A stretch of 63,677 bases of DNA, filler included, from Octopus bimaculoides (Eukaryota), in the NCBI RefSeq assembly GCF_001194135.2. It is 6 parts of 6 records of this genome, joined end to end, with 100 filler letters (N's around TTAATTAATTAA, not from the genome) between each part and the next. Parts side by side here need not be neighbours in the genome. Positions count along the whole stretch, not along the records: positions 31,569 to 51,823 come from NC_068997.1; 5 more parts are not named here. One strand, written 5' to 3'. Both the position numbers and the translations under genes were made by a program. Below the pieces are notes generated by a model that did no database searches, was not told where the DNA came from, and worked only from the letters and a program-made list of their open reading frames with translations. Of this stretch, positions 47,163 through 47,501 are shown in pieces (the stretch's first letter is position 1; each line of letters starts with the position of its first letter).

Positions 47163-47501
47163 GATTTCTTCTGCCACATCACTCGGTTCCGGGAGAGCAG
47201 GAACCACAGATCACTGAAATCCAAAACGCAGAACTTAGTGAAGACCTAGCTGGAGCCTTTTTGGGTGAACAGGTCTTGATCGCCTTGTTCACTAAGTATA
47301 GCACCACCATCCCACCCAGTGCAGCAGTTGAGTGCCTGTTCTTTATAGGCAAAGGGTTAGGGTTAGGGTTAGGGTTAGATATTTTGAGATATTTTGAGAA
47401 CCAAGAGAGCCACCCTGTCAGATGGTAACTTTGAGAGGCTGATGTTTATGAAGGGCAACCAGCATCACAACCGGGCGATGGAGAAGGCTCAGCCAGAGTA
47501 G
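47163..47501 (+). pseudogene. hAT transposase C-terminal (dimerisation domain) remnant
   Basis: LIALFTKYSTTIPPSAAVECLFFIGK [insertion] DILRTKRATLSDGNFERLMFMKGN matches the hAT pattern LF.KYNT.LPSSA.VERLFS.G..IL..KR..LSD..FE.L.F.K.N. Confidence 0.85.
47354..47377 (+). repeat. Short interstitial telomeric repeat (GGGTTA)4
   Basis: Four perfect units inserted between the K and D codons of the hAT remnant, followed by duplicated GATATTTTGA. Confidence 0.9.

What the first reader, a model, noticed from the sequence alone, without database searches (positions are those of the whole stretch)
47351..47397. Telomeric repeat insertion that splits a hAT transposase reading frame
Seen: the hAT peptide reads ...CLFFIGK | DILRTKR..., but between these codons lie (GGGTTA)4 and an extra copy of GATATTTTGA. 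Removing 34 nt restores the frame and the motif. The flanking A (47353) and G (47378) continue the TTAGGG register. Established: short interstitial telomeric sequences in vertebrates are attributed to telomerase-templated double-strand-break repair, often with flanking duplication and microhomology. Inference: a telomerase-patched break in a mollusc genome, with the ancestral empty site readable from the transposon itself.
Basis: partly seen in the sequence, partly recalled or inferred. Interest (0 to 1): 0.7.

Follow-up and report, generated by a model that had tools for sequence, protein, structure and literature searches.

The report
Telomere-repeat patch in dead octopus transposon
A decayed copy of a hAT "jumping gene" in what looks like an octopus genome carries a 34-base insert made of four perfect telomere repeats plus a 10-base copy of the next stretch of DNA; this is the scar type known from vertebrates, where a broken chromosome is mended with telomere repeats, so it is a clean but single and functionally neutral example.

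Summary
Window 47354-47377 is a perfect (GGGTTA)4. It is followed by GATATTTTGA twice (47378-47397). Removing 34 nt restores ...ECLFFIGK|DILRTKRATLSDGNFERLMFMKGNQHH...*.

All 22 protein relatives are contiguous at the site, and 45 of the 59 related DNA loci that span it are ungapped nearby. None of the 86 loci (215 kb) has a telomeric tract. The insert is therefore private to this copy, and the empty site can be read from paralogues.

The copy is a dead C-terminal and 3' remnant. It has a stop where relatives have W and a 31-nt deletion.

The host is probably an octopod, because the window shares two other dispersed repeats with O. vulgaris. TTAGGG is the one experimentally determined cephalopod telomere motif.

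The structure fits the vertebrate "short interstitial telomeric sequence" class (Nergadze 2007, Santagostino 2020). It has 2 nt (AG) in register at the break. The duplication differs from that class: both copies lie on one side of the tract, so it is not a filled-in staggered break. One model rebuilds the sequence exactly: primer ...CAAAG + (GGTTAG)4 + ATATTTTGAG + ATATTTTGAG..., with AG at all three junctions.

Telomerase involvement is inferred, not shown. The tract lies in a 545-bp contig between assembly gaps, and no reads could be checked. I rate it a new member of a known kind, of modest interest.

The parts
47163..47672 (+). Remnant of a hAT-family transposon: the last ~110 codons of the transposase plus the 3' subterminal non-coding region. 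It is cut at the 5' side by an assembly gap and at the 3' side by a microsatellite and the contig end.
   Evidence: Its peptide matches proteins of O. bimaculoides, O. vulgaris and Cherax at E 1e-26 to 1e-9. 17 of the 23 aligned sequences hit Pfam Dimer_Tnp_hAT. DNA is 85% identical to the O. vulgaris copy L001. 3' homology to other copies ends near 47672. No upstream transposase parts are found elsewhere in the piece.
47247..47249 (+). TAG stop where relatives have TGG (W of ...VKTWLE...). This lesion is independent of the insertion.
   Evidence: Frame-1 translation of the contig reads ...NLVKT*LE, against the relatives in alignment A1. Coordinates.
47253..47254 (+). Site of a 31-nt deletion, with frameshift, relative to the O. 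vulgaris copy.
   Evidence: Pairwise DNA alignment A2; coordinates.
47165..47353 (+). Upstream part of the split coding frame, ending ...PPSAAVECLFFIGK (K63 = AAA 47351-47353).
   Evidence: Translation and alignment with 22 relatives.
47353..47378 (+). Telomeric tract: perfect (GGGTTA)4 at 47354-47377, G-rich strand on +, with the flanking A and G in register (4.3 units). Read as primer ...CAAAG followed by (GGTTAG)4.
   Evidence: TRF 100% matches. It is the only tract in the piece, with 0 in 100 shuffles. It is absent from all relatives.
47378..47387 (+). Extra copy of GATATTTTGA. Equivalent registers are AGATATTTTG or ATATTTTGAG.
   Evidence: TRF period 10, 2.3 copies, 100%. Relatives have one copy.
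47388..47501 (+). Downstream part of the split coding frame: DILRTKRATLSDGNFERLMFMKGNQHHNRAMEKAQPE*, with the stop at 47499-47501.

Best explanation
A germline double-strand break inside an already non-functional hAT remnant of an octopod genome was repaired in one event that left a short interstitial telomeric sequence.

Proposed steps, all inferred:
1. The left end was exposed as ...GGCAAAG-3'. Its terminal AG is in register with the telomeric template.
2. Telomerase added four GGTTAG units.
3. The new ...TTAG-3' end paired through AG with the other end (or the sister chromatid) at AAAG|ATATTTTGAG. A repair polymerase copied 10 nt and came off.
4. The ...TGAG-3' end re-paired through AG at the same place. 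Synthesis then ran on.

The result is tract + ATATTTTGAG + ATATTTTGAGAACC.... It has no function: it is a neutral repair scar.

What is shown: the insertion, its privacy to this copy, the empty site, the perfect repeats and the AG at all three junctions. What is inferred: telomerase as the source of the repeats, the single-event order, and the polymerase slip.
For: - The 34-nt insert and its exact composition are in the sequence.
- All 22 protein relatives read contiguously across the site. 45 of the 59 spanning DNA loci are ungapped nearby, and no telomeric tract occurs in the 86 related loci, 215 kb in all.
- The O. vulgaris copy aligns with a gap of exactly 34 nt.
- The restored site (GGCAAAGATATTTTGAG) has no TTAGGG seed beyond AG, so stepwise microsatellite growth is unlikely.
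- The model primer ...CAAAG + (GGTTAG)4 + ATATTTTGAG + rest rebuilds the observed 91 nt exactly, and each junction has AG at the primer 3' end.
- In mammals, 75-80% of such insertions have at least 1 nt in register against 25% or less expected. Deletion, addition or duplication at the break is common. Repeat-element consensus has already been used as the empty site (PMC2246262; PMC7215372).
- TTAGGG is the experimentally determined telomere motif of an octopod (PMC13218726).
- The window shares two further dispersed repeats with O. vulgaris but not with the crayfish locus.
- The tract and both 10-mers are mismatch-free, while the copy differs from its O. vulgaris relative at 14.6% of sites. 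The event is therefore young relative to the copy.
Against: - This is a single locus. Two nucleotides of register arise by chance about 1 time in 16.
- There is no TERC-derived flank, and no Rfam family is hit in the piece. Nothing ties the repeats to telomerase specifically.
- The duplication geometry (both copies 3' of the tract) is not the staggered-break pattern described for vertebrate ITSs. It needs an extra slip step.
- The contig is only 545 bp, between gaps of a fragmented assembly. No reads, second assembly or orthologous locus could be examined.
- No paralogue closer than about 85% DNA identity was available. A young subfamily sharing the insert cannot be excluded.
- Host identity is indirect.
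Confidence: 0.55

Rival explanations
1. Same break-repair scar, but without telomerase. The break captured a fragment of telomeric DNA (extrachromosomal telomeric repeats), or a cDNA of telomeric RNA. Alternatively, a repair polymerase switched template briefly into a telomere or another interstitial tract (microhomology-mediated template switching) before returning.
For: The authors of the vertebrate work name capture of telomeric DNA and retrotranscribed telomeric RNA as alternatives (PMC2246262; PMC7215372). The adjacent 10-nt templated duplication with AG/AGA microhomology shows that a template-switching polymerase acted at this break anyway. No TERC-like sequence is present.
Against: The tract starts in register with the ancestral AG and consists of exactly four whole GGTTAG units. 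Capture of a random fragment would give this only by chance. No other telomeric tract lies nearby in the piece to serve as a template.
Confidence: 0.25
2. Artefact or non-germline variant. The tract is an assembly or sequencing error in a very fragmented short-read assembly, or it is present in only one haplotype or somatic clone.
For: The contig is 545 bp long, flanked by 389 and 920 N, in a piece with 10 internal gaps and 127 tandem-repeat rows. No exact or near-exact second record of the locus exists in the protein collection.
Against: Both flanks are collinear, adjacent parts of one hAT motif. The insert is exactly 24 + 10 nt with a templated duplication. Chimeric reads or graph errors join unrelated sequence and do not create such a structure.
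Confidence: 0.08
3. Two unrelated events: a 10-nt slippage duplication (AGA...AGA microhomology) and a separate telomeric insertion that happen to abut.
For: The ancestral AGATATTTTGAGA has a 3-nt direct repeat at 10-nt spacing that could promote slippage on its own.
Against: The two changes abut exactly. Besides this insert, only two other indels separate this copy from the O. vulgaris copy over about 370 nt of the coding part (a 31-nt deletion and a 1-nt indel). Exact adjacency by chance is therefore of the order of 1%.
Confidence: 0.07
4. Not a repair scar. Either the tract is a microsatellite born by replication slippage, or it is the 3' tail of an extremely truncated retroelement inserted by target-primed reverse transcription, or it is an excision footprint of a nested cut-and-paste element.
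For: The piece is extraordinarily rich in microsatellites. The doubled ATATTTTG(AG) resembles a retained target-site duplication.
Against: There is no TTAGGG-like seed in the empty site. It is the only hexamer tract of this kind. No target-site duplication flanks the tract, since both 10-mers lie on one side, so neither a retroelement insertion nor filler at an excision site fits.
Confidence: 0.03

Closest known systems
Short interstitial telomeric sequences inserted at double-strand-break sites in primates, rodents and horse (Nergadze et al. 2007, PMC2246262; Santagostino et al. 2020, PMC7215372)
   Same: It is a few perfect TTAGGG units at an internal site. The flanks are contiguous in the empty state. 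Nucleotides at the 3' side of the break are in register with the repeats (here AG). The break site carries an extra modification. The empty site is inferred from a repetitive-element relative, as was done for some primate loci.
   Different: The host is an octopod, not a vertebrate. In the papers I read and searched, I found sequence-level analyses of this kind only for vertebrates. The duplicated 10-mer does not flank the tract, as it would after fill-in of a staggered break. Both copies lie 3' of the tract. The empty site comes from paralogues at 85% identity or less, not from an orthologous locus.
TERC-ITS loci: telomeric repeats flanked by retrotranscribed telomerase RNA (PMC2246262, PMC8537989)
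   Same: Telomeric repeats plus an extra non-telomeric segment inserted at a break.
   Different: Here the extra 10 nt is a copy of the adjacent flank, not of telomerase RNA. No telomerase-RNA family is hit in the piece. The cephalopod TERC was not available to me for a direct comparison.
Templated insertions and microhomology-flanked tandem duplications of alternative (polymerase-theta-type) end joining. This is from my own knowledge and was not checked in the library.
   Same: A short stretch next to the break is copied once more. There are 2-3 nt of microhomology (AG/AGA) at each restart. This matches the aborted-synthesis and re-annealing signature.
   Different: That pathway alone does not explain a 24-nt perfect telomeric tract. 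The enzyme cannot be identified from the sequence.
hAT superfamily transposons (Hermes, Ac, hobo), C-terminal dimerisation region PF05699
   Same: The split motif ...VERLFSxxGxIxxxxRxxL... and its position at the very C-terminus. The family profile aligns to Hermes residues 491-525 (chain 2bw3_A).
   Different: All matches are weak: best Pfam E 2.5e-5, O. vulgaris protein 20.8 bits against a cut-off of 21.4, Hermes E 0.27. The window copy itself hits nothing in Pfam. It lacks the catalytic core and both ends.

Membership tests
Short interstitial telomeric sequence inserted at a break site | A short run of the host's own telomeric repeat at a non-terminal site, with unique sequence on both sides | tested here: met
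   (GGGTTA)4 is perfect, 4.3 units with the flanking A and G, inside hAT sequence on both sides. TTAGGG is the determined telomere motif of an octopod (PMC13218726). An octopod host is inferred from shared repeats.
Short interstitial telomeric sequence inserted at a break site | An empty state exists in which the two flanks are contiguous | tested here: met
   This was tested with paralogues only. All 22 protein relatives are contiguous at the site, and 45 of the 59 spanning loci are ungapped nearby. No telomeric tract occurs in the 86 related loci. The O. vulgaris copy shows a gap of exactly 34 nt.
Short interstitial telomeric sequence inserted at a break site | An orthologous locus in a related species or another individual is empty (used for dating and polymorphism) | not testable with these tools
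   No eukaryotic genome DNA search is available. An exact-protein look-up of the window ORF found nothing.
Short interstitial telomeric sequence inserted at a break site | The tract appears in one step, with no telomere-like seed in the empty site | tested here: met
   The restored site GGCAAAGATATTTTGAG shares only AG with the repeat. Relatives are likewise seedless.
Short interstitial telomeric sequence inserted at a break site | [quoted passage not shown] | tested here: met
   AG, 2 nt. The chance expectation for 2 nt or more is 6.25% or less (PMC7215372 Table 6). A single locus is only weak evidence.
Short interstitial telomeric sequence inserted at a break site | Any flanking duplication brackets the tract (filled-in staggered break) | tested here: not met
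   Both GATATTTTGA copies lie 3' of the tract. This feature is an optional subclass: 4.6% of rodent and 16% of primate loci in PMC2246262 and 4.5% in PMC7215372. It is not required for membership.
TERC-ITS | A segment retrotranscribed from telomerase RNA outside the template lies next to the repeats | tested here: not met
   The extra 10 nt is an exact copy of the adjacent flank. No Rfam family reaches threshold in the piece. The cephalopod TERC was not available for a direct test.
hAT superfamily transposon | C-terminal hAT dimerisation region (PF05699) | tested here: inconclusive
   The window peptide, restored or not, gives no Pfam hit at E<=1. 17 of the 23 aligned sequences hit PF05699, best E 2.5e-5. 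The O. vulgaris protein scores 20.8 bits against a cut-off of 21.4. UniRef names the O. bimaculoides relative as containing a hAT C-terminal dimerisation domain. The profile matches the Hermes C-terminus at E 0.27.
hAT superfamily transposon | RNase-H-like DDE catalytic core upstream of the dimerisation region | tested here: not met
   This applies to the window copy. tblastn with the upstream ORFs of the O. vulgaris locus finds nothing in the piece. The region would fall in the 389-N gap or is deleted. Those upstream ORFs gave no Pfam hit either.
hAT superfamily transposon | Short terminal inverted repeats and 8-bp target-site duplication | not tested
   Neither end of the element is in the window. 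3' homology stops at about 47672, where a microsatellite and the contig end begin.

The most novel reading that the evidence does not exclude
This would be sequence-level evidence that telomerase takes part in repairing internal chromosome breaks outside vertebrates, in a cephalopod. One scar would record three successive primer realignments, all through the same AG dinucleotide: first on the telomerase RNA template, then twice on a DNA template. That would imply a hand-over from telomerase to a template-switching repair polymerase at a single break.
Probability: 0.4. Interest if true: 0.45.

Novelty: new member of a known kind. Interest (0 to 1): 0.3.

Why it matters
If real and made by telomerase, this scar extends a vertebrate-defined repair pathway (telomeric repeats added at internal breaks) to molluscs. 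It also shows that dead transposon copies can serve as built-in empty sites for finding such events in genomes that lack close outgroup assemblies. Octopod genomes are very repeat-rich, so a genome-wide survey built on this idea could give enough loci to test the in-register signature statistically. A single locus has no functional consequence and does not change what is known about the mechanism.

Tried and rejected
1. I looked for the same locus in other assemblies by exact look-up of the insert-bearing ORF. It is not on record. The homology search returned nothing above 81% identity, so no second record of the locus or a close paralogue was available.

2. P0022, a relative whose tail reads GLGLGL/RVRVRL, looked like a second telomeric tract in the family. 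Its DNA is a GACTTG-type repeat, not TTAGGG. Rejected.

3. Many metagenome loci matched only from residue 64 onwards, which suggested a recurrent breakpoint at the same codon. They belong to one subfamily with a divergent upstream stretch and 5 extra codons (HKHIF) before DIL, not to a breakpoint.

4. I tried to identify the host through another ORF of the piece (38181-38489). No homologue was found. Host inference rests on shared repeats instead.

5. An Rfam scan of the piece for telomerase RNA or any other RNA family gave 0 hits.

6. A Pfam scan of the window peptide, with and without the insert, gave no hit. The profile search against solved structures gave only marginal Hermes matches.

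7. I considered a staggered-break fill-in, a retroelement tail with target-site duplication, and a nested-transposon excision footprint. All predict that the duplicated 10-mers bracket the tract, and they do not.

Full report
**What is there**

The finding lies in a 545-bp contig (47163-47707) bounded by N gaps of 389 and 920 bases. The surrounding piece is a very fragmented, microsatellite-rich assembly with 127 TRF rows in about 15.4 kb of real sequence.

The + strand reads GGCAAA | GGGTTA x4 (47354-47377) | GATATTTTGA (47378-47387) | GATATTTTGA (47388-47397) | GAACC. TRF gives AGGGTT x4.3 (47353-47378) and AGATATTTTG x2.3 (47377-47399), both at 100% identity. This is the only TTAGGG run in the piece. 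A 24-mer search allowing up to 3 mismatches found nothing else, and none appeared in 100 dinucleotide-preserving shuffles.

As it stands the frame reads ...AVECLFFIGKGLGLGLGLDILRYFENQESHPVRW*. Removing 34 nt gives ...AVECLFFIGKDILRTKRATLSDGNFERLMFMKGNQHHNRAMEKAQPE*. Three placements of the deletion are equivalent, so the junction has 2 nt (AG) of ambiguity.

**Is the tract private to this copy?**

The restored 100-residue peptide finds 22 proteins (E 3e-26 to 2e-9). They come from Octopus bimaculoides, O. vulgaris, the crayfish Cherax quadricarinatus, and unnamed metagenome and read-assembly contigs. All 22 read ...LFSIGKDIL.AKRA.LSD... without interruption at the site.

The O. vulgaris copy (locus L001) aligns to the window at 85% DNA identity, with a gap of exactly 34 nt at the site. 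A scan of metagenome contigs added 80 loci of the family. Of the 86 loci in hand (215 kb), 59 have a match that spans the site, and 45 of those are ungapped within a few codons of it. The other 14 carry small indels of other kinds in more distant or decayed copies. None of the 86 loci has three or more TTAGGG units anywhere.

At the DNA level the closest copies read GGCAAA|GATATCTTGA (Cherax) and AGCAAA|AATATTTTGAGG (O. vulgaris). The insertion is therefore a derived state of this copy or of a subfamily I could not sample. No paralogue closer than about 85% identity was available.

**What the carrier is**

Seventeen of the 23 aligned sequences hit Pfam PF05699, the hAT C-terminal dimerisation region. 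The hits are weak: the best E-value is 2.5e-5, and the O. vulgaris protein scores 20.8 bits against a cut-off of 21.4. The family profile matches the very C-terminus of Hermes transposase only at E 0.27. UniRef labels the O. bimaculoides relative as containing a hAT C-terminal dimerisation domain. The window peptide itself hits nothing in Pfam.

I accept the hAT assignment as probable. The window holds only a remnant:
- about 110 C-terminal codons plus the 3' subterminal region, to about 47672;
- no upstream transposase sequence anywhere in the piece;
- a TAG where relatives have W (47247-47249);
- a 31-nt frameshifting deletion at 47253/47254.

The "reading frame" that the tract splits was therefore probably already dead, or at least is dead now for other reasons. 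The insert has no functional meaning.

**Host**

The host matters, because arthropods generally use TTAGG (PMC5528210 abstract) and the family also occurs in a crayfish. Beyond the hAT itself, the window shares two other dispersed repeats with the 10-kb O. vulgaris locus: 46575-46706 at 88% identity and 41107-41235 at 77%. It shares none with the Cherax locus. This points to an octopod.

TTAGGG is the only experimentally determined cephalopod telomere motif (Amphioctopus areolatus, as cited in PMC13218726). A direct species identification failed.

**Comparison with what is known**

Giulotto's group showed that in primates, rodents and horse, short interstitial telomeric sequences appear in one step at break sites. 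The flanks may be unmodified, or carry deletions, additions or duplications. About 75-80% of informative loci have at least 1 nt in register with the repeat at the 3' side of the break, against 25% or less expected by chance. For loci inside repeats, the repeat consensus served as the empty site (PMC2246262; PMC7215372).

The present locus meets these criteria: a one-step appearance, no seed in the empty site, and AG in register. In the library searched I found sequence-level analyses of this kind only for vertebrates. For molluscs I found only a description of interstitial TTAGGG arrays in a slug assembly, which its authors attribute to chromosome rearrangements.

**Where it differs, and the mechanism I propose**

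In the published "duplication" class, the direct repeats bracket the tract and are explained by fill-in of a staggered break. Here both 10-mers lie 3' of the tract. That explanation fails, as do a retroelement insertion with target-site duplication and filler at a transposon excision site.

A simple model rebuilds the observed 91 nt exactly:
1. The left end ...GGCAAAG-3' is extended by four whole GGTTAG units.
2. The new ...TTAG-3' end pairs through AG at AAAG|ATATTTTGAG on the other end or on the sister chromatid.
3. Ten nucleotides are copied and the end is released.
4. The ...TGAG-3' end re-pairs through AG at the same place, and synthesis continues.

All three novel junctions have AG at the primer 3' end. 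Steps 2-4 resemble the aborted-synthesis and re-annealing signature of alternative end joining. That resemblance is from my own knowledge and was not tested here. Step 1 is the telomerase inference.

The exact adjacency of tract and duplication argues for one event. Besides this insert, only two other indels separate this copy from the O. vulgaris copy over about 370 nt of the coding part.

The 24-nt tract and both 10-mers are mismatch-free, while the copy differs from its O. vulgaris relative at 14.6% of sites. This suggests a comparatively young event.

**What remains open**

- Telomerase is not demonstrated. Two nucleotides of register at one locus is weak evidence. There is no telomerase-RNA-derived flank. 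Capture or copying of telomeric DNA or RNA would give the same product.
- The junctions could not be checked in reads, in a second assembly or in an orthologous locus. The contig is short and gap-flanked. However, an assembly error is unlikely to create a collinear 24 + 10 nt templated structure.

**Verdict**

This is a real-looking, well-formed short interstitial telomeric sequence in a dead hAT remnant of a probable octopod. It is a new member of a known kind, in a new phylum, with an unusual one-sided duplication. As a single locus it is of modest interest. Its value is as a template for a genome-wide survey.

Noticed in passing
L002 (Cherax quadricarinatus CM076759.1) 5001-5396; proteins P0002, P0007: A crayfish genome holds copies of this hAT family that are 74-81% identical in protein to the window's octopod-like copy. 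That is as close as the octopus copies are to it. The patchy distribution suggests horizontal transfer of the family between distant animal phyla, or contamination.
   Followed up: no
window 47403-47468: This 66-nt coding stretch (...ATLSDGNFERLMFMKGNQHH) is 85-89% identical at the DNA level to copies on many metagenome contigs whose other parts are far more diverged. This is unusually strong nucleotide conservation for a transposon tail.
   Followed up: no
window 46575-46706 and 41107-41235; L001 7379-7510 and 6712-6836 (minus strand): Two short dispersed repeats are shared with the O. vulgaris locus (88% and 77% identity). They are probably SINE-like elements. I used them only as evidence for an octopod host.
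   Followed up: partly
L031-L034, L036, L041-L043, L048, L053, L057, L061, L065, L069-L071, L073: One metagenome subfamily has 15 extra nucleotides (HKHIF) immediately before the DIL codons. This is an independent indel at the very codon boundary where the window has its insert, preceded by a divergent stretch. It could be coincidence or an indel-tolerant loop of the domain.
   Followed up: partly
L087 9396-9560 (protein P0022): A relative reads through its normal end into a GACTTG-type repeat that translates as GLGLGL/RVRVRL. This mimics a translated telomeric tract but is not one.
   Followed up: yes
window 38181-38600: Two overlapping ORFs carry Cys/His motifs (CDQCGHACFSKAGLHSRKH; CSLCTLCSREYGSAGGLNRHCRF). 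They look like the tail of a retroelement protein. No homologue was found in the 5.8-billion-protein collection.
   Followed up: partly
window 47499-47530 versus P0001: The O. bimaculoides relative P0001 reads ...AQPEWYTLIII past the point where the window has TAG, then a 1-nt difference. The stop codon of this family's ORF is therefore itself variable between copies.
   Followed up: no
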